Below are positions 210 to 49,497 of a stretch of 64,000 nt of DNA, piece after piece. Source of the DNA: Stylophora pistillata (taxonomy: Eukaryota); the NCBI RefSeq assembly GCF_002571385.2, contig NW_019217887.1:415010-479009 (forward strand), in the 5' to 3' direction. The position numbers and the translations under genes were made by a program. The notes under the pieces are model-generated. The model ran no database searches. It saw only the letters and a program-made list of their open reading frames with translations, and was not told the DNA's origin. Each line of letters opens with the position of its first letter. Within the stretch, counting starts at the first letter, position 1.

Positions 210-3200
210 CTGAAGTTTTAAAGAACAATGGGAAAACCAGCATATTAAACAGAACATCAAGAGCAGTAGCCAACTTGGCAGCTGACGAGCTTAGTGTACA
301 GGTCATGGAGGAGCTCGGAGTTATTCATGAACTTGTTAAATGTTTTACAAAGACATCTGATAGTGATTGCCAACAGTCTGTCTTAAGAGCTCTGAGGATG
401 GTGTGCACAAATTCAGAAAGAAAAAAGGCCATAGTGGATTTAGATGCCATTAAAACCATCATGGAAGTGCTACAATCTGATAAGCCTTCACTAGTGAATT
501 GCTGCATAAAAACTGTAGCAGAACTTACCAAGGAATGTAGTAAGGAATTTGCACAGCAAGTTCAAGATTGCGGTAGTGTCAAATACATTGTTAAGCTTAC
601 CAGCAGTGACCTTTTGCAAGTGAGGAACTCAGCTACTCTGTCCCTAGCAAACTTAGCCCATCATGCTCATGTGCGTGTTTGTATTGGCAGTGAAGGTGGG
701 ATAGAGGCTTTGACTGAACAGCTCAAAAAAGATGAGCTGGGGCATGTTACTGTCAAGGCCATTGAAGGACTTTGCTATTGTTGCAGAGAAGGGATCAACC
801 GCCTAAGGGTGCGTGATTCTTCAGCATTGGAACTGTTATTGAAGATTTTACTGTCAGGAAAGTGGCTGAGTCTTGAGAAAAAGATTGTTGCTGCATTTGC
901 TCAGTTCTGTCACAGTGAAGTAGACTTGGAAATTCTCCTTAATGGAGATCTAGTTCCAGGTCTAATGAATCATCTTAACAGGATTATACATCAAGTACAA
1001 TCCAAAAATGACCATGATGATGACCATGATGATGGTTTAACAGATCATCAATCATTTTCAGCAGACTTCTACACTGATTACTCAATGAGGACAACATCAG
1101 TCAAAAGTGTATTTTCCGATGTTAGTGCAGAGGCGCTGAAGGATGAAACTTTCCTCAAGAAGCTTGAAGAAACAGCAAGGGAGGTCACGGACACAAAAGT
1201 GACAGGCCAACTTTCAAAGTTCAAAAGGAGACTAAAACTAAAGCCTTCACCCATTCCAACCACCCCACCTCCAGGTGTGTGTACCATAGGACAGTCAGTG
1301 TTCAGTTTTGCTTCCAGACAGACTGATACAACAACATTAGTGTCGGTATGCACCTCTTCTCGCAGTGTTTCATCCCTTGCATCTTCCTGGAGTGACTTCG
1401 CAACATTGCGAAGTGCAAGTTGCCCAAGAGTGTTGCCGTCACATCAAGATTTTTCAAAAACACAGAGAGAATGTGATTTACATGAACCAACTGCAGCTCT
1501 AACTTGTGATGATCCTACTTCAATGTGCATTGAAAATCAAACCCAGGTGATGCTAGGTTCCCCAGTTGGCCTACATCCTGCTAGTGGTAGTGTTCAAGGT
1601 GAACCTGTGAAAAAAAGTCCTGTCTCTCCTTTGTCACCAAAGGTTCAGTCTGGGTTGCATCACAATCGGAGTCTTGGCCAAAGTGCTCTTACCTTGCTAC
1701 TGCGTATAGCACATATGACCAATCCAAGCATTCATCTTGTGAACAAGGATTGCATTGGAGTTTTGTTGGATTACCTCTGTTTGGTGAACAATCCTAACCC
1801 CAAGTGTGCACGTATCCTTAATCTTCTGGCTGCAAATCCACTATGTTTCAGAGATTTAATAGTGCATGGAGCTGTGGTTGCCATTCATCACCAGTTGTGC
1901 TTCAGGAATTGTGAATATCAAGAAAGTACTGGCCCACTGAAGCCCTGTGATCCTGATTTAAATGCTTATTCATTTGAGGAACAGAGATTGCCAACACCCT
2001 TCAACAGCCAAAGTTCTGAAGACAGTGTATTCAAACCAAAAGACAAGATCAGCCCTAATGCAAAATACCAGTCTATGTCTTCAGCAACCCAAAGCCATTG
2101 TCAGGAAACAGGAAATCATTTATTAAAGATCCTCTCTAACCAAGCACAAACCCCTTGTGGAAAGGGTGAGATTGAACATATACTTCTCACAGGATCAAAG
2201 GAAGAATGTGAAGACTGTGTGCTTGCCTTGCCACTTCTATGCAGGTACTTACATGTGGTACTACATTTTGCCTATGTTAAACATTAGGTCCTTGCCTCAT
2301 CAAAGACATTTAATTTGGGATAGTGTTTGTCTTCATTGACAAGTTCACCTTTTGTTGATACATTTTTGAAAACACTGTCCTCTACACAGTGGCCAGTGAC
2401 ATGAAGCTGCCTACCTTTATAGTAAATGCAGGGGTGGTACAGGTCCTGGAATATTATTTTGACATTTCCTGGGACTGGATTGTCTTAAAAAAAGACTACA
2501 GGTCTTGGAAAGTCATCTATATATGCTCAACTGAAGCAAAAAAGTTTCACAATTTGTTTTATTCAGTGAGAAGTGCATGTGGTGTAATGAAAATTGATTT
2601 TGAAATCTTGGGAATAAAAGGCCCGGGAAAATTTAATCTGAGTCCTGGAAAAGTCTTGGAAAGTCTTTGAAATTTGATTCTGAAAAAGGTGATGAACCAT
2701 GTAAATATAGAATATGTCCCACTGGGCATTTTGCCTCTTCCCCACCCTTTTCTTCAGCATGGCCTATTTGTACCATGTTAAAACCAGTAAAGGGCAAATG
2801 TGCTCACCATGCCTAGTTTTCAAATACCTAGTTTATTGTTTGAAAGACTTGTATACCCAAAAGAAGGCTTTTTACAGTTTGTGTTTACTGCATTTTTGTG
2901 TCCAATGGCATTACATCAAGTACATGAACCATCACAGGATCTTTCAGGGACCAAAAAAATGCTAAAAATGTTTATTTTCATATTTTCTAGGACCACTAAA
3001 CTGAGACAACAAATGCTTGTTGATAGGAAGGGCTTAAGGATGCTGTGTGATATTTTCAAATCACTCTCTCCAACTGGTAAAACCTTTCCAACTGTTGTGG
3101 AGTCTTTGATAGTTTTGGCGAATGAGTTACAGCTAAAGTTCCCCTCGAATGTTACAAGGAAGGAAGGTGAAGGTATTTCTAAAGATCTGACTTCATCAAC

Positions 3201-3942
3201 CAATGAAGAAACAAACCTAGAGGCTTCTGATGATCTGCACCAAAGGAAAAAGCTGAAAAAGGATTTCAGCAACATCCAGGCTTCATCCTCAAATGATGAG
3301 AAAGATTGTTTGTCATGCCTGTACCATGCAAATTCCCTTGGTCTTCCCGATGCTACATTTGTAATGGACAACGGGGATAAAGTTGTGGCACACAAACAAC
3401 TTATGATGTCAGCCTCTGATTTCTTTGCTGCCATGTTTTCAGACAGTTTCTTAGAATCAACACAGTCTGACATCTCTCTTCAAGACATTTCTGTGGATGT
3501 CTTTGGATTTGCATTACATCATATGTATGGATGCAAGATAATTCCAAATGAACAGATCTCTAGTGAAATGATTTCATCTCAGTCATGCTGTGACGTGTTA
3601 AAAAGAAAAGTTATGGAAATTCAAATGAATCACGATGAACTACAGTTCTTTTTAGAGCTGTTAACACTTGCTGACAGGTTTTTTTTGGACAAACTGAGAA
3701 CCCTTTGTGAGAAATTCCTGGTTAATTTAATTAATGCTTCCACTGTGCTGCAGGTGTACAATTATGGTTATCAATGTAATTCTCCACAGTTGTGTTTGCT
3801 TTGCCTTACATACCTTCTGACCATCAACCCATCCAATTTGCCAAATCATATGTATATATTCAAAGAACTGTTCCTTAGTAGTGAACAAGGACATCTTGCA
3901 GATCAATTGTATGAAATACTCCTTTCTCATTTAAAACATTAA
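210..3942 (+). CDS. ARMC5: Armadillo repeat + C-terminal BTB protein (ARMC5); last two exons, 5' end lies upstream of the window
   Basis: Exons 210-2244 (after ttccctcag, donor gtactt) and 2991-3942 (after tattttctag) join in frame as ..LLCR|TTKL.. ARM repeats (SILNRTSRAVANLA, VRVCIGSEGGIEAL) plus a BTB domain (DATFVMDNGDKVVAHKQLMMSASDFFAAMF) match the ARMC5 architecture. Confidence 0.88.
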
Positions 3943-5082
3943 TATACAGCCTTTAATGGTACCAGACAATTTGCTTATGCGCACAGGAGACCCTCAGTCA
4001 TTGAAATTGGTATCTTAATCCAAAATATGTGTAAATCAATTTGCCGCTTCAACATCCTTCTCCTCTGTTCATACAAGCACTTCTAAGTTCAGTTTTATCT
4101 GCATGTAACAAGTTGCACAATTGTAATCTTTCAAATGAATCATCTTGTAATCTGAATTGGGAGACCAGAAAAGAGTAAATTTGTTGGCAGAATTCACTTA
4201 CAACTGTATTAAAAAATTCATTTGTCTTTCATAAACCCACAACAAACACTTGTTTAAAAAACATATTATTTTAAAAAAAAGTATATATTATCATGTAAGT
4301 TAAAATGTAATTAGATAATAAATATTTAAACACTCAGGTAGTTTGAATTTGAAGTGATTGGTATTTCATTTGGCATGCAGAGCAGTTACATTGTTCCAGT
4401 TAATTTTTTCTGGCAAGGTTTTATGTCATTTTTCAGGGGGTTGCACAAAGTAGGTCTGCCTGGCCAACTGCAGCTGCAGCGCTACGCAAAGATAAGGGGT
4501 GGGTGTTGGCAAACAGATAAAGGATTGACTTTCAGGAATCTAAAAATGTTTGACATTTGATACCTCGGAATATGACCTTAGACAGACAAAAACAAAAACT
4601 TGAACTGGCTTTTTAAAGACCCGATTTTTGGCAGATTATTTACACACTAGCGTAGCCAGTACGTGCTCGTGCCACTAAGTTGAAATGATTTATTCTGTAT
4701 TTTTGTAACTTTCTATTTTTTAGTGTTTTTTTAATTCATAATGGGTTGCGTCTCGCATGGGACTTTACGTCCCGTTCGTGCCCTCCCTTTTGGGTGCAGT
4801 TTTATCTCAGTTTCTCTTCTGTTTTCTATTTGTTATTGTGTTATTGTACTTTTGCCTTGCTTAAATATTTATCTGATATGCCCAATAAAGTCGTTAAAAA
4901 AAAGGTAGTTCTAAGGATTAGACAACAAATTATCTCCAAAATTTTCATTGATAGCAGGCCTGTTGGGTCCAGCTGCTGTTCGTGTAACCTTATGGAACCT
5001 TGTTCACAAAGAAATGAAATTCAATCAGGGAAAAAATTGATCACGTACTAGGTAACCGAGGAGAAAATCACACAAGTCAGAG

Positions 5083-5535
5083 CACAGGGAGCCCACACAA
5101 GCAGCGTGTCTGGTTGTTTGTTTGAAATATAAAGAAATGAACATATGAACTTCATATATTCATTGTATAAAGAAATGTATGGGAGAATATTGAAGAGTCG
5201 TAATATCATAAACCTATATCGAAGAATGTCTATGTTAAGGCTCAAATAAATGTACACCTACCTCACTTGCCGTGTATTGTCGTTTCTGTGGTTCTAAATG
5301 GCATATTTGAGCGATTTGGTAGATTTTGCGTCGACTGTTACTCCACTGTATAAGAAGGTTAGAACCACAGAAACGACAATACACAGCAAGTGAGGTAGGT
5401 TTACATTTATTTTGAGCCTTAACATAGAAATTCCTCGATATAAGTTTACGATATTACGGCTCTTCAGTATTCTCCCATACATTTCTTTATATTTCGAACA
5501 AACGACCAGACATGCCGCTTGTGTGGGCCCCTGTG
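5083..5535. mobile_element. Foldback element with long TIRs (P/Galileo-like), 7-bp TSD
   Basis: Arms 5083-5297 and 5359-5535 are inverted copies; termini CACAGG..CCTGTG; gtcagag at 5076-5082 and 5536-5542. Confidence 0.8.
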
Positions 5536-6319
5536 GTCAGAGCCACCACGAATGAATCAGATGAATAGTTTCTCAGTTTCTTGAGCTTTAGTGAGATCAT
5601 TGAACTGTATTTATTTTATCCTTAACTAACAAGTATGGAAATTAACAATGCAACAGCAAGGCAATTTTTATTTCAGGGGCACGTTCTTTTTTATTTGCTA
5701 AATTAACAGAGGACCAAATGATTCGCAAGTGTAAGTCGCCTTTGGAAATTTGTAGAGTTGTTTTTTCAAACTTCTTTTCCTTGATATCTTGTATTAGTTA
5801 TTTTTTTTCAATTGTTTTTCATTAGAAACTTCACTCTTTTATTTACTTTTGTTTTCTTTCGTAATTATAGTATTTTAATTTATATGAGTACTTTAGGTGA
5901 TTTTCCTTTTAGTCAGAGTCGGGTCAGGTAGCGGTTGCCGTCGCGTATTTGACCCGAGACCCGTCTCTTATCTGGAACAGTGAGTTATGCCACTAAACCC
6001 TTCAACTCCCCAGATCTGATTGTTAATTCTCCCCTCTAGCTGCTACTCATTTCCTTGTAAATTAGTCACAAGGATTTGGTGTTAGATCAAGATTGCATCT
6101 AACTGATAGGTTTGAGAATAATTTCTCATTACCTGTTTGCTGGATAAAATATGGATATTGAGAGGAGAGGTTCCTTGTCAATCACTTCTGGGAGTTAAAG
6201 GGTTAGCCTGGCAATGGGTAGGAACAGTTTTCACATGGATCTTGTTGATGATCATTCTAAACTAGACCTGCCACTCATGTTACATTTTAGAGAGAAAATA
6301 TTATCAGTTTTATAAATTT

Positions 6320-42805: not shown

Positions 42806-45792
42806 TTACTCAAGTGTTCTGCAGAATTGTAAGAAAATGGAAACCAACACCACAAACAAAACTAAAAACATCAGATACACAGCAGGGGTGTTAGGTGCCT
42901 GCTCTTCCTTCTTTAGCAAGACACGAGTCTTTGTTGCATAAATCACATTTCCTGGAGCATCTTCAATAGCTTTTTTAGCTCCTTTCCATGCACCAGGGCC
43001 CATTAGACGATACTGGACTGGTGTACAAGGTCCAAAAAAGCACCTCAGGGCTAGTGTAGGATCACTGAAAAAGAGCTTTACCAAGTTTGGCTTGCAACCA
43101 ACCTGATTTGCCAATTCATCAGCATAGGGGATGTAGTCAACCTGTGAAAGTGAAGAGAGGTTTTTGCAGCTGAGATTAAAAACTATCTAAGATACATTCT
43201 GGAATAAAGATAAAATGAGATGCAACTATAGTTAACGAGTTTGGAGTTGGTATCCAAAAGCATTTGCTTTTATTCACTTCAAATTTCTAAACAAGCATCT
43301 AATGCTCTAAGAAGAAAAAGAAGTTTAAAGGATCTTTCAGTTAAAATCCTGTGAAAATTTCAGCCTGTTCTAAAGGCATTGAGTCCTTTTAAGGCCATGC
43401 CTGGCAAACACAGCATTTAGATATACTGCCTTAACTAAAGATATCTAACTTTGTGATTGAAAAGACTCCAGCCCCCTTTCAGCAGGTTTGGTTTTCTATC
43501 TCATTTATCATTAGGATTTTAAATTTCTTGTAATAATTGCTCAGTGATGTCATTTTACAAACAACATTGATGTGAGCAATCAGAATTCCCACACTTGCTG
43601 AAACTCTGCAAACATTGGTCAGCAGTGGATCCAGCATTTCCATAATGGAAAACCTCAAAACAAACCTGTAGTACAAATGCAAACTAGAGCCCTCATTCAA
43701 AACTCTAGATAGGACATGATCATCTACCAAACAGAGTGTGCTCTTCTTGATAATCACAGAAAAAATCATACAAAGAAATTGATATACCACTGATAGTACA
43801 TTGGAGCTTGGTTATTTTACCTGAATTGTGTGGCGTTTAGAAGTATAATATCTATTTTGCATGGCCTCTCTTTTCATTTCAACATCTTCCATCATGGCAT
43901 TCTTAGAGGGAAGGGGTGTTTTCCCACCAAACACTCGGGTTGCCCACCGTCCCTGGAGTTCTGACAGAGGGAAAATGGCACCAAGAGGTTGCACACATCC
44001 AATAACAGCAAGGGTTGGTTTGGTAAGGTTTGGTGGGAACACATATTTGTACAAATCAACTTTGTTGTCACTAACTGGGAGAATTGATTGATCAATGAAC
44101 CTGAATCCTATCTTGTACCCTGTGCAGAAGATCACAGCATCCAAGTCATTTATTTGGGTACCATCATCAAAGATAACTCCAGTTTCGGTGAAAGAGCTCA
44201 CATTAGGTTTAATGACAACACTTCCAATGATTATGCGGTGAGGCAGTGCATCATTGACCATTGGATGCTGACCAGCAATTGGATGTTGAGGCTGCAGTGC
44301 AAAAACTTCATGATCAAATCTCTCATTTAACATTTTTTTAAAAAGACTTGTTCGAAGGGAGTTTGGCAAAAGAGTCCCAAAACGCCTGTTGACCTGCTGG
44401 TCCAAAGGCTCGCCTCCCTTCCCCATGCGGGACAGGACCCAAGCCCCTCTGCGAGTACTGAGAAAGACTTGTTTAGTGTGACGACTGAGTTCCACAGCAA
44501 TATCACCACCAGAGTTCCCTATACCTGTAGATAGAAAAAATTTGCAGATCATTGCAAAACACACTGCTGCTTTAAACTAATAAATAAAATACGAGCGTGG
44601 GTAAACGTGCCTGAAAAGTAAGCCGGAGGCTCAAGTGCATACAGAAGGTAACCATGACAACCCTTGAAAGGCCATTAACAGGTAAACTGAGTTCTCAGTG
44701 TGACATAAATCTGATCACCTCTTAACTTCTGGGGTTGTTGAAGGAGCAATGGGAGCTAGTCAGGAGCATTGAAGAAAAGAATGATTAAGACTCAGATTAC
44801 TTTGCAAGGGTCATTGGCTATTCATTTTTGTCCAATAAAAAGTGATGACTAATGGAGACGACTGTCTCTCATCTGTTTATCAACTGCCAGACAAAGAGCA
44901 TGCAAAAACAAAAGGCTGAGGGATTTGGAAGTTTTATGCAATCTTCCCAATTTCCCAATTGTTTTGTTTTAATTTCATTTTAAACAAATTTCATTAGTAA
45001 TCGGCTTGACATAATAAATCATGATCAGATCGTGCCATTATGTGGCTACGCAATTTGTTTCAGACAAAAAAAAAAAGCCAGACAAAAATTACTTATCTTT
45101 GACACTGTTTCAAAGATTCTTAAGTTTGAAGGTTGGAGATAGGGGAGCAGAGATAGCCAGGAAATTTACTTGAAAAATTAAATATTTGATTCGGGGAGAA
45201 AAAGGTCAAGAGCAAAATACCTACCAACCACTAAGACTTTCGTGTTTTCAAATGGTTTAAAGTCTTTGTATGCATGGCTGTGGATCTTACGCCCTGAAAA
45301 TCCGTCCATACCGGGAAAGGTTGGCCACGAAGGATCTGAGTGGTGACCCACACAAAGCATCACAGCATCGTACACTTCTTTCTTCACTGCGTTGGGATTC
45401 TTGTCGTCAAGTTCTTGAAAGAGGATTTCCCATTTCCCGCTTTCATCAAAATCTGGCGCTTTCTTGAGGTCAACCACCTTAGTGCGAAACCGAATGTTTC
45501 TGTACAATTCGAATTCTTTCGCGTACAAATGGAGGTATTTCATGATCAATTGGTGATGCATAAACGGGGGATATTCTTTAGGGATTGGAAAATCCGAAAA
45601 GCACATCATTTCCTTGCTGGTGTTAATTACCGTTGACCTGTATACGGAGCTATGTCGCTCCTCCTCGGTAAAATACCACAGTCCTCCAATGGAGTCCTCT
45701 TGTTCGAAACATACCGGTTCTAATCCTTCGTCTTTGCAGCATTTTATGCAGGTAAGACCACTAGCTCCAGCTCCTATTATTGCAACCCTCAT
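42806..45792 (-). CDS. Flavin-containing monooxygenase, paralogue B (FMO5-like), 3 exons
   Basis: Exons 45792-45225, 44524-43821, 43141-42806, with the same intron positions as paralogue A. GAGASG, FSGRKIHSHAYK, GIGNSG, FCTGY, RHTIQVDY and a hydrophobic C-terminal anchor. Confidence 0.95.
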
Positions 45793-45925
45793 TTTTTTAA
45801 AGCGAAGTAAATAAGAGTTTAACTATCGCGGAAAAAATTAATTATCAGAACATATTCATTATGTTACATAACATCTGCTCTCTCTGATTAGGCAACTAAG
45901 GTTAAATAGAGCAGACTCATGTAAA

Positions 45926-46552
45926 CACAGGCAGCCCAAGCTCACTACAAGAAAAGAGGACGCGACTCCTACCGTGTTGCGCAACGTTTTGTATTTGTAT
46001 GAGATGTTATTGGTTTGCTTTAAGAGAGAGAAAAAATGTCTTGTTTTGAAATAAAATGGACTTACCTTATTGCCTTGTTGTTTTCGTTGTTGATTCCTAG
46101 CGTCTCAGGCCATTTTGAAGCGTTTTCGGCGAGTTAGCGCTATGTTTGTGTTCAACTGCTTAAAGAAGCAGTTGGACACCAACATAGCGCTAACTCGCCG
46201 AAAACGCTTCAAAATGGGGCTCATTCTCGGTGTAAAACCCTGTAAAGCTCACGAGTGACGTAAAACAAAGACAACAAAACACAAAAATAGCGTACAGCAA
46301 AACAATACCTCATGAAACAAAGAAAACCTCGTCAGATTTTTACACCGAGGATGACCCCAAAATGGCCTGAGACGCTAGGAATCAACAAAGACAACAACAA
46401 GGCAATAAGGTAAGCCCATTTTATTTCAAAACAAGACATTTTCCTCTCTATTTTAAGGCAAACCGATAACATCCCATACAAACCTTTATAAATATAAAAC
46501 GTTGCGTAAGAGTCACGTCCGCTTTTCCAGTCGTGAGCTTGGGCTGCCTGTG
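45926..46552. mobile_element. Foldback element (P/Galileo-like) between FMO-B and SHPK, with nested palindrome
   Basis: Termini CACAGGCAGCCCAAGCTCAC..GTGAGCTTGGGCTGCCTGTG; long inverted arms (about 215 bp excluding the nested insertion); flanks atgtaaa / aagtaaa (6 of 7 match). Confidence 0.78.
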
Positions 46553-46611
46553 AAGTAAAATGCACCAAAAATATCCTCACGCTTTGCAAGTTTCATTTGT
46601 TGCGTGACAAG

Positions 46612-49497
46612 ATGGTGGATTGTGACTCGGAATCTTTCGTCCTCGGAATAGACTTAGGAACAACCTCGATAAAAGTGTCGTTAGTGCGAAATAGTAATAG
46701 AGATGTCATCGAAAGCTATAGAATTGATACAAGGGCGTATAATTCCGGCGAGAGATCGAACTTTGCAGAGCAGGATGTCGTAAAAATATTTGCTTGTTTA
46801 CAACATGTACTTGCCCAATTCTCTCCACATTTCCTGGCCAAAGTGGCTCGTATTGGTATTTGTGGACAAATGCATGGATGTGTGATGTGGAAAGGTGAAA
46901 CATGTAGTTTATCAAGAGGTGGTGACCATTTTATACAGAGCGATAATGTCTCTCATCTCATTACTTGGGAGGACGGGAGATGTGACAATGAATTTTTGGG
47001 CACCCTACCCCCTGCACGCACAAATATTCCTGTTTCTACTGGTTTTGGATGTGCAAGCATGTTTTGGCTACAGAGAAATGACCCTAGCTTCTTGGAACGT
47101 TTTGACTGCGCTGGAACCATCATGGATTACGTTGTTTGTGTTTTTTGTGAAATGAGAAAGCCTTGCATGTCCACGCACAATGCAGTCAGCTGGGGATATT
47201 TTGATGTCAATCATATGACATGGGAGTTAAATATGTAAGTTAGTAATTTCACATGCTTATCAAGTTCTTCTCTTCCTCTTAATGGAAATTCTGTGAAAAT
47301 TTCTGACTGCTGGGCATTTTGTCCATTTGAGCATGCCCAGCAGTCTGATTTCTAAGTGTCAACAACCAAGTGTAATTGCAAAAGTTTGGAAAATTGGCCA
47401 ATTTAAAACATCAAATTATTTTTTGGAATTGCTTGACATTTCTAAAAAAAGTTTGCATATTCTAAGAGGTTGGAAACAACCTTTCAGTGGAAATTCTGTG
47501 AAAATTTCTGACTGTTAGGCATTCAGATTGAGCCCAGTTGCCTATCTGATTTTGTACAAGCAGTCAACACCAATGTCTAGTAGGGTAGACTGCAAACCTA
47601 TTATTTTTACTCCTTATTCAGTCTGAAAAAGGCAAACTTCCCCACTCAACTTCTACCAGTGGTGGTGCAACCAGGTACAATTGTCGGTAAGCTACAAAAG
47701 TCTTTGTATGGAATTCCAGTTGGTACACCTGTGGGGGTGGGTCTCGGGGACTTCCAGTGCTCATTGCTGGCAAGCATATCCCAGGAAAGTGATGCAGGTA
47801 ATACAATATTTGAAGTGTTTTCCATGCATGTTGTATCACCAAACCTTTTAACCCCCAGAGGTGATTAATGTGCAACTTCTCCCTACAATATCCATAGATT
47901 ATCCAATAAACAAGTAAAGAGAATACTGAAACTACTCCGGTAGAACACCAAATTCTTGAAACTAATTTACAAGGAAATGCATAGTGGCTAGGGGGAGAAG
48001 TGACAATCAGATCTGGGGAGTAAGGAGTTAACAGTATTTGTGGTCTCTTTGACACAATGGTATGAGGACAAGAGGTTGTCCAAAGAAAACCATAGGAAAT
48101 GAAGTGGTGATTGAGATAAAGACTTGAATCAGGGTCATTAATGGTCAAAATGTAAGACTTGTGGGACATGAAAGGTGACAGGCCATTGCCTAAGAAGTTT
48201 AAGGGAAAAAGAAAGCATAAGAATTAATCATTCTTATCCCTTACCAGTCATGACTAGAAACTTTCACATTTCAAACAAAACAAAATTCAACCAGTGTTTT
48301 AATTTCAGTTCTCATATATTTTGATTTTCAGTTCTTAATATTGGCACATCCTGTCAACTGGCTGTGGTTATTCCTGCTAATACCAACAGTGTGGCCACAG
48401 GGGAATCTTCATTTCAAACCTCAAAGATGCCTAGTAAAGCAGTTACAATTCTTCCATTCTTTCATGGACAGAAAGTTATGACAGCTGCATCACTTTCAGG
48501 TTAAGTCAGATTGCCTTCATTTATGTTTGTACTGCTGGTTCAAAGAGTGAACAAACCCTTCCTTTTCACTCACAGGAAGTTTCTTGTACACTGGAGATAG
48601 CAGTGTTAACTTTAAATCTTTAGTCCACCACTGTTTACCTCTATCTATCTCCAGAGATATATCTTTGGGTTGCAACGATGTTATAGAAAATTTTAATTTT
48701 CTATAATGGGTCTTAAAAGACCCATAGGGGTTCTTGGAAAATTCTTAATGCATTGATCATTTTGTTGTTTGTTCAGGAGCACGTGACATTGCATTACATT
48801 TATGGTATTTTTAAAATGAGTGACAGGGATCAAATGTCAAGTATTTTTACTTCGTTCGAGTTTTTTGCCTTGTGTAGATCGAGTATTCGTCGTGGAGGTT
48901 TTGTTCTTAGTCAAACTAAAGTAAAACGTTTAGTTTAACCGTGGATTTATTGAGTCATTCTCAACAATGTTGGTAAACTAAGAAATCTTTATTAAGGTCT
49001 AACTGTCAGCTGTTGTTTCTTTTGTCAGCACAGGTGGTAATATTTTGGCCACCTTTGTTAAGATGTTGACATCATGGATGAGAGATCTTGGACTTGAAGA
49101 GAGCCTTCCTTGTACAGATGAAATTTATCGTAGAATTCTAGCCTGTGCTGATGAGAAAGGTGCAACATCACTTCAAGTGGTTCCAACTTTATGGGGTGAA
49201 AGGCACTCTCCTGATCAAAGAGGACAAGTGAACAACTTGACATCAGGAAATATCTCACTCGGTGATGTTGGATTGGGTCTTTGTCGAGGAGTTATTGAAA
49301 ACATACAAGAAATGATGACACGAGATTTCCTTCATTTGCATGGTGTGCGACAAATAGTTTGTGCTGGTAGTGCTCTGATGAGAAACCAAGTGCTACAGAA
49401 ACAGGTTGAACAGGTTTTTGAATTGCCACTGGTATTGAATGAACTTGCAGATGCATCAATAGGTGCTGCGATAGTGACTCTCTTGGAGAGAAATTGA
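46612..49497 (+). CDS. SHPK: Sedoheptulokinase (FGGY family, CARKL), 4 coding exons
   Basis: Exons 46612-47234, 47622-47797, 48332-48499, 49034-49497. Motifs LGIDLGTTSIK, GQMHGCVMW, LITWEDGRC, GTIMDYVV, NAVSWGYF, LGDFQCS, LNIGTSCQL, AASLSGGN, GERHSP. Confidence 0.93.

What the first reader, a model, noticed from the sequence alone, without database searches (positions are those of the whole stretch)
45793..46611. A foldback transposon appears to supply a mirror-image promoter and 5'UTR to two divergent metabolic genes (FMO-B and SHPK)
Seen: 627 of the 819 bp between the two ATGs are one inverted-repeat element (45926-46552; CACAGG..CCTGTG; flanks atgtaaa/aagtaaa). Reading outward, each arm has aaaATGGCCTGA (a YY1-like motif and a Met-Ala-stop uORF), a consensus donor AAG|GTAAG (46410 on +, 46065 on -) and a pyrimidine tract with an AG acceptor (46530 on +, 45945 on -). 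Both candidate introns are 121 nt despite indels between the arms. Only about 60 bp and 130 bp of unique DNA remain before the SHPK and FMO ATGs. Known: CA..TG ends, long TIRs and 7-bp TSDs typify Galileo-type P elements. Inference: an exapted element acts as a symmetric bidirectional promoter/5'UTR cassette.
Basis: partly seen in the sequence, partly recalled or inferred. Interest (0 to 1): 0.8.

Follow-up and report, generated by a model that had tools for sequence, protein, structure and literature searches.

The report
Foldback transposon splitting a coral bidirectional promoter

Summary
Window 45926-46552 is a 627-bp inverted repeat between the divergent first exons of an FMO gene and an FGGY-family (SHPK-like) kinase gene.

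It is a transposon. The genome holds 664 matching termini. 29 of 36 copies have 7-bp target duplications. Other corals keep the two genes head to head with a 158-172 bp spacer, no element, and the target ATGTAAA present once inside the best-conserved spacer motif. The window copy is a 479-bp foldback MITE carrying a second, nested 141-bp MITE (46217-46357, duplication CAAAATG).

RNA contigs give partial support for a function:
- Kinase mRNA contigs run unbroken from inside the right arm (from 46506 or 46516).
- The right-arm donor (46409|46410) is used, but it joins a cryptic acceptor in exon 1 (46844) or exon 2 (47622). Both forms drop the start codon.
- One FMO mRNA contig runs 134 nt into the left arm with the proposed intron retained. 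Three others stop before the element.
- The proposed 121-nt introns were not seen spliced at this locus.

A start site inside the element is inferred, not shown. P/Galileo membership is unproven. This is a known kind of event with an unusually clean empty site.

The parts
45178..45792 (-). FMO first coding exon (ATG at 45792; the mRNA exon ends at 45222, donor into a 700-nt intron)
   Evidence: Pfam FMO-like 4e-71. Joint 44521/45222, CT..AC on + which is GT..AG on -, in all 4 runs.
45793..45918 (-). FMO-side remnant of the old spacer. It is the FMO 5' leader at least as far as 45887-45906.
   Evidence: mRNA contigs end at 45887 (X10, X12) and 45906 (X2), and run on to 46059 in X6.
45919..45925 (.). 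Left copy of the 7-bp target site duplication, ATGTAAA
   Evidence: The same heptamer is present once in other corals.
45926..46216 (.). Foldback MITE: left arm (45926 to about 46163), apex (46162-46165) and inner 51 bp of the right arm
   Evidence: Canonical copies are 485-513 bp palindromes.
45945..46065 (-). Proposed 121-nt minus-strand intron. It is retained in the only FMO contig that reaches it.
   Evidence: X6 record 23 is collinear over 45222-46059. The consensus acceptor AG is TG here.
46217..46357 (.). Nested second MITE (141 bp, 26-nt terminal inverted repeats), flanked by the duplication CAAAATG at 46210-46216 and 46358-46364
   Evidence: Absent from 15 other foldback copies. Its own family has at least 286 candidate sites. 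Inverted repeat I4. Loose ends of RNA contigs at 46357.
46358..46552 (.). Foldback MITE, outer right arm
   Evidence: 89-93% identity to other copies.
46381..46409 (+). 3' end of an element-derived leader exon. The donor AAG|GTAAG at 46409|46410 is used.
   Evidence: X6 joints 46409->46844 (depth 66) and 46409->47622 (depth 53), both GT..AG.
46410..46530 (+). Proposed 121-nt plus-strand intron. It was not seen spliced at this locus.
   Evidence: No such joint in 4 runs. Collinear kinase contigs start at 46506 (X6) and 46516 (X2), upstream of the acceptor.
46553..46559 (.). Right copy of the target site duplication, AAGTAAA (one mismatch)
46553..46611 (+). Kinase-side remnant of the old spacer, holding the conserved motifs GTAAAATGCACCAA and TTGCGTGACAAGATGG
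   Evidence: Alignment with 7 coral contigs.
46612..47234 (+). First coding exon of the FGGY-family (SHPK-like) kinase. A cryptic acceptor lies at 46843|46844. The normal donor is at 47234|47235 and the exon 2 acceptor at 47621|47622.
   Evidence: Pfam FGGY_N 2.5e-17. Joints. Sequence.

Best explanation
A non-autonomous foldback DNA transposon, about 479 bp, almost all inverted repeat, making 7-bp target duplications, inserted into a compact bidirectional promoter that the FMO and FGGY/SHPK-like genes have shared since before scleractinian corals diverged. It landed in the best-conserved spacer motif, about 50 bp upstream of the kinase ATG. A second 141-bp MITE later inserted near its centre. 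Both genes are still expressed. Kinase transcripts now carry element sequence in their leader, so at least some start inside the element or upstream of 46381. This is inferred from contig extents, not from mapped starts. The strong outward donor in the right arm is recognised by the spliceosome. It is joined not to the element's own terminal acceptor but to a cryptic acceptor in exon 1 or to exon 2. These isoforms lack the AUG and the GIDLGTTS phosphate loop, so they are most likely non-productive. On the FMO side most transcripts appear to start in the unique DNA just outside the element. One sample shows an unspliced leader reaching 134 nt into the left arm. The element is therefore a tolerated insertion that has become part of the 5' transcribed region and perturbs splicing. 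It is not a demonstrated symmetric promoter cassette.
For: Transposon: 664 termini against 0 in the reversed control. At least 740 candidate sites. 29 of 36 copies have 7-bp duplications with at most 1 mismatch, and the target motif is NTYNRAN. Size variants run from 48 bp to 3.5 kb with the same termini. Empty site: seven contigs of other corals keep the FMO and kinase exon 1s head to head with 158-172 bp between the ATGs and no similarity to the element. The window spacer minus the element and one duplication copy is 185 bp. TCATGTAAAATGCACCAA is contiguous in those contigs and is split exactly at ATGTAAA here. Nested MITE. RNA: kinase contigs 46506-46870 (X6) and 46516-47211 (X2) cross the element boundary. 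GT..AG joints 46409->46844 and 46409->47622 have contig depths (66, 53) comparable to the kinase exon contigs of the same run (69-88). In X6 a spliced FMO contig runs to 46059, and its element part is about 97% identical to this left arm, while other copies are 85-89% identical. 46844 is position 2 of codon 78, and the next in-frame Met is residue 87.
Against: All RNA evidence comes from de Bruijn contigs. They cannot show starts, strand or abundance, and a contig can fuse mRNA with rare upstream reads. The upstream side of the 46409 joints is only k-1 (30) nt long and is nearly identical in all family copies, so assigning it to this copy rests on parsimony. The joints were seen in one run (X6) only. 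Kinase expression is low in X10 and X12, which say nothing about the leader. Three FMO contigs stop before the element.
Confidence: 0.6

Rival explanations
1. One reading: the element is an exapted, symmetric bidirectional promoter and 5'UTR cassette. Both genes start near its centre, and each leader loses a 121-nt intron lying inside its arm.
For: Both genes' contigs reach into the arm facing them. The donor and the acceptor TTTTCTAG|TAG are in the family consensus. A junction of exactly this type (46066->45947/45944) occurs in X2 RNA at depths 96 and 42.
Against: That junction is followed by flanks unlike the FMO flank: its short side is 22 nt, exactly the terminal 22 nt of the element, and there are loose ends at 45925. 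It therefore comes from other copies. At this locus the minus-strand intron is retained (X6), and the plus-strand donor goes to 46844 or 47622. Collinear kinase contigs include the 3' part of the proposed intron. Three FMO contigs end outside the element. The left-arm consensus acceptor is mutated. The gene pair worked with a 160-170 bp spacer before the insertion.
Confidence: 0.1
2. Inert passenger: the two promoter halves left outside the element still drive both genes from their old start sites. Element sequence in RNA contigs is background read-through or assembly spill-over.
For: FMO contigs end at 45887-45906 in three runs. The target duplication preserved ATGTAAA on both sides, and the kinase-side conserved motifs are intact. 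Contigs cannot prove single molecules.
Against: Two kinase contigs from two studies are collinear across the boundary into locus-specific arm sequence. The two canonical GT..AG joints from the arm donor to kinase acceptors have contig depths comparable to the gene's main contigs.
Confidence: 0.25
3. Not a transposon: a local inverted duplication, or an assembly artefact of the intergenic DNA.
For: None beyond the palindromic shape. Three other copies have reverse-complement flanks, which could be artefacts.
Against: There are hundreds of dispersed copies with the same termini and 7-bp duplications. There is an exact empty site in other corals. RNA contigs from independent individuals cross both boundaries.
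Confidence: 0.01
4. The 46409 joints do not come from this locus: the leader exon is supplied in trans, or by a chimeric assembly path from another copy of the family.
For: Only 30 nt of repeat-derived sequence lie upstream of each joint, and the tool flags sides under 30 nt as risky.
Against: Both joints use exact GT..AG borders. One uses the same exon 2 acceptor as the normal exon1-exon2 splice (47622). The nearest upstream donor of that sequence on the right strand is this arm. I know of no report of spliced-leader trans-splicing in anthozoans (own knowledge, not checked here).
Confidence: 0.05

Closest known systems
Galileo / P-superfamily foldback-like transposons of Drosophila (PMC4168063, PMC2775673)
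   Same: Very long terminal inverted repeats, 7-bp target duplications, a palindromic target motif with T at position 2 and A at position 6 (Galileo GTANTAC; here NTYNRAN), and many deletion derivatives of variable length.
   Different: No copy with a THAP/P-type transposase and these termini was found. The arms have no internal tandem subrepeats. The host is a cnidarian. Sequence similarity to Galileo ends was not tested. Positions 3 and 5 of the target motif differ.
Classical Foldback (FB) / Mutator-like foldback elements (for example Tetris PMC4079207, Tm1 PMC3169594)
   Same: An element that is nearly all inverted repeat, has no coding capacity and varies in arm length.
   Different: Those elements are grouped with Mutator and, to my knowledge, make 9-bp duplications and have tandem-repeat arms. 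Here the duplication is 7 bp and there are no subrepeats.
MITEs in promoters and 5'UTRs that alter transcription or add leader sequence (reviews PMC12595863, PMC3278479)
   Same: A short non-autonomous element next to a start codon becomes part of the transcribed leader and offers cryptic signals.
   Different: Here the insertion lies in a conserved animal bidirectional promoter, with an exact empty site, and affects two genes at once. No change in expression has been measured.
TE exonisation and TE-derived alternative first exons (Alu/L1-type cases in mammals; own knowledge)
   Same: A transposon-borne consensus splice donor is joined to host acceptors, giving chimeric 5' ends.
   Different: The donor sits in both arms pointing outward because the element is a palindrome. 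The isoforms seen here skip the start codon.

Membership tests
Class II TIR transposon, non-autonomous (MITE) | Terminal inverted repeats with defined, shared termini | tested here: met
   CACAGGCAGCCCAAG... at both ends of 36 copies. 664 termini genome-wide against 0 in the control.
Class II TIR transposon, non-autonomous (MITE) | Target site duplication of fixed length | tested here: met
   7 bp in 29 of 36 copies with at most 1 mismatch, 24 of them perfect. At this locus ATGTAAA / AAGTAAA.
Class II TIR transposon, non-autonomous (MITE) | Empty site at an orthologous locus | tested here: met
   Seven contigs of other corals have the target heptamer once and no element.
Class II TIR transposon, non-autonomous (MITE) | No coding capacity, short, high copy number | tested here: met
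   The longest ATG-initiated ORF in the element is 46 aa; one search lists an 85-aa TTG ORF over 46332-46589 that runs past the element end. At least 740 candidate sites.
Foldback elements in the strict sense | Arms make up nearly the whole element | tested here: met
   Canonical copies are palindromes with a loop of 4 to about 30 nt. Long forms of 1.27 kb are palindromic throughout.
Foldback elements in the strict sense | Arms built of tandem subrepeats | tested here: not met
   TRF finds none in the window copy and only a 24-bp trace in L054.
P superfamily (Galileo-type) | 7-8 bp duplication with a palindromic target motif | tested here: met
   7 bp, motif NTYNRAN, compared with GTANTAC in PMC4168063.
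P superfamily (Galileo-type) | An autonomous relative with the same termini that encodes a THAP + RNase-H-like P transposase | tested here: inconclusive
   The genome has 51 matches to PF21787. None of 10 loci with 1.5-kb flanks or 8 loci of 10 kb holds the FB termini. The one coding FB copy found carries a PIF1-like helicase fragment instead.
Exapted TE promoter | Transcription start sites inside the element | not testable with these tools
   Only assembled contigs were available. They show element sequence in mRNA contigs but no 5' ends.
Exapted TE promoter | TE sequence is part of the mature host mRNA | tested here: met
   Kinase: contigs from 46506 and 46516, and the leader exon ending at 46409. 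FMO: one contig reaching 46059.
Exapted TE promoter | Evidence of selection or necessity (fixation, conservation beyond neutral, loss-of-function effect) | not tested
   The arms differ by about 16%, similar to the divergence between copies.
Bidirectional promoter gene pair | Head-to-head genes less than 1 kb apart, with the arrangement conserved | tested here: met
   819 bp here and 158-172 bp in seven other coral contigs.

The most novel reading that the evidence does not exclude
The foldback family is a portable, outward-firing bidirectional transcription unit. Each arm carries a start region, a short leader exon with a Met-Ala-stop uORF, a consensus donor and a terminal acceptor. On this reading any insertion can hand a spliced leader and promoter activity to the DNA on both sides, and hundreds of coral loci, including this conserved FMO/kinase pair, have been rewired by it. 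The spliced arm junction seen in RNA from other copies running into their flanks, and the conservation of donor and acceptor in the consensus, do not exclude this.
Probability: 0.1. Interest if true: 0.7.

Novelty: new member of a known kind. Interest (0 to 1): 0.35.

Why it matters
This is a clean natural experiment. An ancient, compact animal bidirectional promoter (about 165 bp, conserved across corals) was split by a datable transposon insertion whose exact empty site is known, and both genes remain expressed. It shows how a palindromic element with outward splice donors can lengthen leaders and create start-codon-skipping isoforms of a housekeeping kinase. If start sites do lie inside the element, it would be a rare case of one transposon serving two divergent genes. 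It would also suggest that this several-hundred-copy family spreads promoter and leader modules through a reef-building coral genome. As the evidence stands, this is an ordinary kind of TE-gene interaction, well documented here.

Tried and rejected
1. Local inverted duplication: rejected, because the element is multi-copy, has target duplications and has an empty site.
2. The central 250 bp as one unit: rejected. 46217-46357 is a separate nested MITE.
3. Known RNA gene in the hairpin: Rfam gives only sub-threshold miRNA-precursor look-alikes, such as mir-9 at 52.1 bits against a 58.6 cut-off, which is expected for any perfect hairpin.
4. Search for an autonomous partner. Longer copies are simply longer palindromes. 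One 3.5-kb copy holds a PIF1-like helicase fragment, not a transposase. P-transposase loci lack the FB termini and showed no clear TIRs, partly because of assembly gaps.
6. Confirming SHPK identity. So "SHPK" rests on the FGGY_N hit plus my own recollection of the N-terminal motifs.
Only single exons were used.
8. Literature searches found no paper on a foldback element acting as a bidirectional promoter, and none on this coral family.

Full report
**What is there**

Window 45926-46552 (627 bp) is an inverted repeat lying between two divergent first exons. On the minus strand is an FMO gene (ATG at 45792; Pfam FMO-like 4e-71). On the plus strand is an FGGY-family carbohydrate kinase (ATG at 46612; FGGY_N 2.5e-17).

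The outer arms, 45926-46117 and 46358-46552, pair in blocks of 96%, 87% and 87% identity. Over their whole length they are 83.7% identical, E 1.9e-50. The whole element would fold as RNA at -385.8 kcal/mol, z = -37.
- the ends CACAGG..CCTGTG
- the flanks atgtaaa / aagtaaa
- AAAATGGCCTGA reading outward in both arms
- donors AAG|GTAAG at 46410 (+) and 46065 (-)
- acceptor AGs ending at 46530 (+) and 45945 (-)
- two 121-nt candidate introns
- 59 bp and 133 bp of unique DNA before the two ATGs

**It is a transposon family**

The window's own genome is 398 Mb in 5513 contigs. It is a scleractinian coral, judging from the run labels. The element has at least 740 candidate matches in it. Its 20-nt terminus occurs 664 times with at most one mismatch, against 0 for the reversed control.

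I read both ends of 36 copies. 29 have a 7-bp target site duplication with at most one mismatch, and 24 of those are perfect. The duplicated sites follow a palindromic pattern, N-T-Y-N-R-A-N.

Canonical copies are 485-513 bp and almost perfectly palindromic. Other forms with the same termini include:
- 0.75-1.4 kb copies that are simply longer palindromes, with arms up to about 640 bp
- 48-56 bp copies that are termini only
- one 3.5-kb copy holding a PIF1-like helicase fragment

The arms contain no tandem subrepeats.

**The window copy is composite**

Aligned with 15 other copies, the window copy has an extra 141 bp at 46217-46357. This segment has its own 26-nt inverted ends and a perfect 7-bp duplication, CAAAATG, at 46210-16 and 46358-64. 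It is a second MITE, with at least 286 candidate sites of its own. Without this MITE and one copy of its duplication, the foldback element is 479 bp.

**Exact empty site and an ancient gene pair**

A scan of JGI metagenome contigs with the kinase exon found ten loci from other corals. Nine are 65-68% identical in the kinase exon; the tenth (L076, 32%) is distant and was not used. Seven of them also carry the FMO first exon, at 64-84% amino-acid identity. In all seven the two genes lie head to head with 158-172 bp between the ATGs, and there is no similarity to the element. The window spacer, minus the element and one duplication copy, is 185 bp.

The best-conserved block of that spacer reads TCATGTAAAATGCACCAAGAG in L067 and L075, and TGATGTAAAATACAGCAAGAG in L068-L072. 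In the window this block is interrupted exactly after ATGTAAA, and AAGTAAAATGCACCAA resumes after the element. This is a textbook empty site. The bidirectional arrangement and a compact shared promoter predate the insertion, and the insertion split the promoter's most conserved motif. Because of the duplication, the heptamer survives on both sides.

**RNA evidence (four runs, contigs only)**

*FMO.* A spliced mRNA contig (intron 44522-45221) extends 5' to 45887 in X10 and X12 and to 45906 in X2, all short of the element. In X6 it continues without a break to 46059, 134 nt into the left arm. Its element part differs from the window at only a few positions, whereas other copies are 85-89% identical to this arm, so it is this locus. 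That contig retains the proposed minus-strand intron.

*Kinase.* Collinear contigs begin at 46506 (X6) and 46516 (X2). They cross the element boundary and the ATG. They also include sequence upstream of the proposed acceptor at 46530.

*Joints from the arm donor.* In X6, two joints with canonical GT..AG borders run from the right-arm donor (46409|46410). One goes to a cryptic acceptor inside exon 1 (46843|46844, contig depth 66). The other goes to the normal exon 2 acceptor (47621|47622, depth 53). Both contig depths are comparable to those of the gene's own exon contigs in that run (69-88). Both forms omit the ATG. Position 46844 is the second base of codon 78, the next in-frame Met is residue 87, and the GIDLGTTS loop at residues 12-19 is lost. 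These forms are therefore probably non-productive.

*The proposed introns.* No 46409->46531 joint was reported. A joint of the proposed minus-strand type (46066->45947/45944) does occur in X2, at depths 96 and 42. However, its short side is exactly the 22 terminal nucleotides of the element, and the contigs then run into flanks unlike the FMO flank. It therefore comes from other copies. The arm mini-intron can be spliced somewhere in the family, but this was not shown here.

*Family consensus.* In the consensus the donor AATAAG|GTAAG and the tandem acceptor TTTTCTAG|TAG are both present. In the window's left arm the first AG has become TG. The two arms lost 8 bp and about 10 bp independently, so the equal length of 121 nt is a coincidence.

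**Limits**

Contigs cannot show transcript starts, strand or abundance. A contig may also merge mRNA with rare upstream reads. The upstream side of the 46409 joints is only k-1 (30) nt of repeat sequence, and I assign it to this copy by parsimony. The joints were seen in one run only.

**Interpretation**

The best-supported reading has four parts:
- A foldback-type MITE inserted into an old bidirectional promoter.
- The insertion has been tolerated.
- Part of the element is now transcribed as 5' leader of the kinase, and sometimes of FMO.
- Its outward donor hijacks kinase splicing.

That transcripts start inside the element follows from three inferences:
- The leader exon ending at 46409 must begin upstream of 46381.
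- The FMO contig in X6 must begin beyond 46059.
- A transcript crossing the whole palindrome would form a double-stranded stem of about 240 bp.

This inference is not a measurement. The symmetric cassette with two spliced 121-nt introns is not supported at this locus.

**Classification**

The 7-bp duplication, long arms and palindromic target motif resemble Galileo of the P superfamily, which makes 7-bp duplications at GTANTAC (PMC4168063). The genome contains P-type transposase genes. None that I examined carries these termini, so membership is unproven. Classical Foldback and Mutator-like elements differ: they have subrepeat arms and, to my knowledge, 9-bp duplications. Literature searches found no description of this family and no foldback element acting as a bidirectional promoter.

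**Verdict**

This is a new member of known kinds: a MITE or foldback insertion in a promoter, with a TE-derived leader and a cryptic donor. It is notable mainly for its exact empty site in a conserved bidirectional promoter. Interest is about 0.35. It would be higher if start-site mapping places both starts inside the element.

Noticed in passing
L022 (G000:C2361), L027 (G000:C349), L055 (G000:C41:795792-796953): Three of 36 foldback copies have flanks that are reverse complements of each other for at least 15 bp, instead of a 7-bp direct duplication. The palindrome runs on into host DNA. This could be an assembly artefact or hairpin-primed copying.
   Followed up: no
L063 = G000:C525:143800-148200, element 441-3961: A 3.5-kb copy of the family with 640-bp arms and the duplication cttaaac/ctcaaac encloses a 597-aa open frame with a PIF1-like helicase domain (PF05970, 1.2e-20). 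It may be a Helitron fragment or a captured gene. It is not a transposase.
   Followed up: partly
L096 (G000:C15:1351168-1351223), L097 (G000:C22:267465-267512): Derivatives of 56 bp and 48 bp that consist only of the two termini, each with a perfect 7-bp duplication. These look like extreme internal deletions, as expected from gap repair after excision.
   Followed up: no
window 47876-48000: Another very high-copy repeat inside the kinase gene. Summed RNA-contig depth is 3500-5900, and there are many loose ends at 47944 and 47978-47979.
   Followed up: no
window 46553-46611 and L067-L075: Two spacer motifs are conserved across corals: TCATGTAAAATGCACCAAGAG, about 45-65 bp upstream of the kinase ATG, and GTTGCGTTACAAAACAAGATGG at the ATG. 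They are candidate factor sites of the shared promoter. The first contains an ATG that opens a 15-codon uORF (46560-46607) in the extended leader seen here.
   Followed up: partly
window 47275-47320 and 47480-47525: A direct repeat of about 45 bp (GGAAATTCTGTGAAAATTTCTGACTG..), 205 bp apart, in kinase intron 1, next to a 16-nt palindrome at 47302-47348. It is probably another small repeat element.
   Followed up: no
window 46114-46213: The apex hairpin of the foldback scores 52 bits against the Rfam mir-9 model, below the 58.6 cut-off. It is a generic hairpin look-alike, not evidence of a miRNA, although such palindromes are plausible Dicer substrates if transcribed right through.
   Followed up: partly
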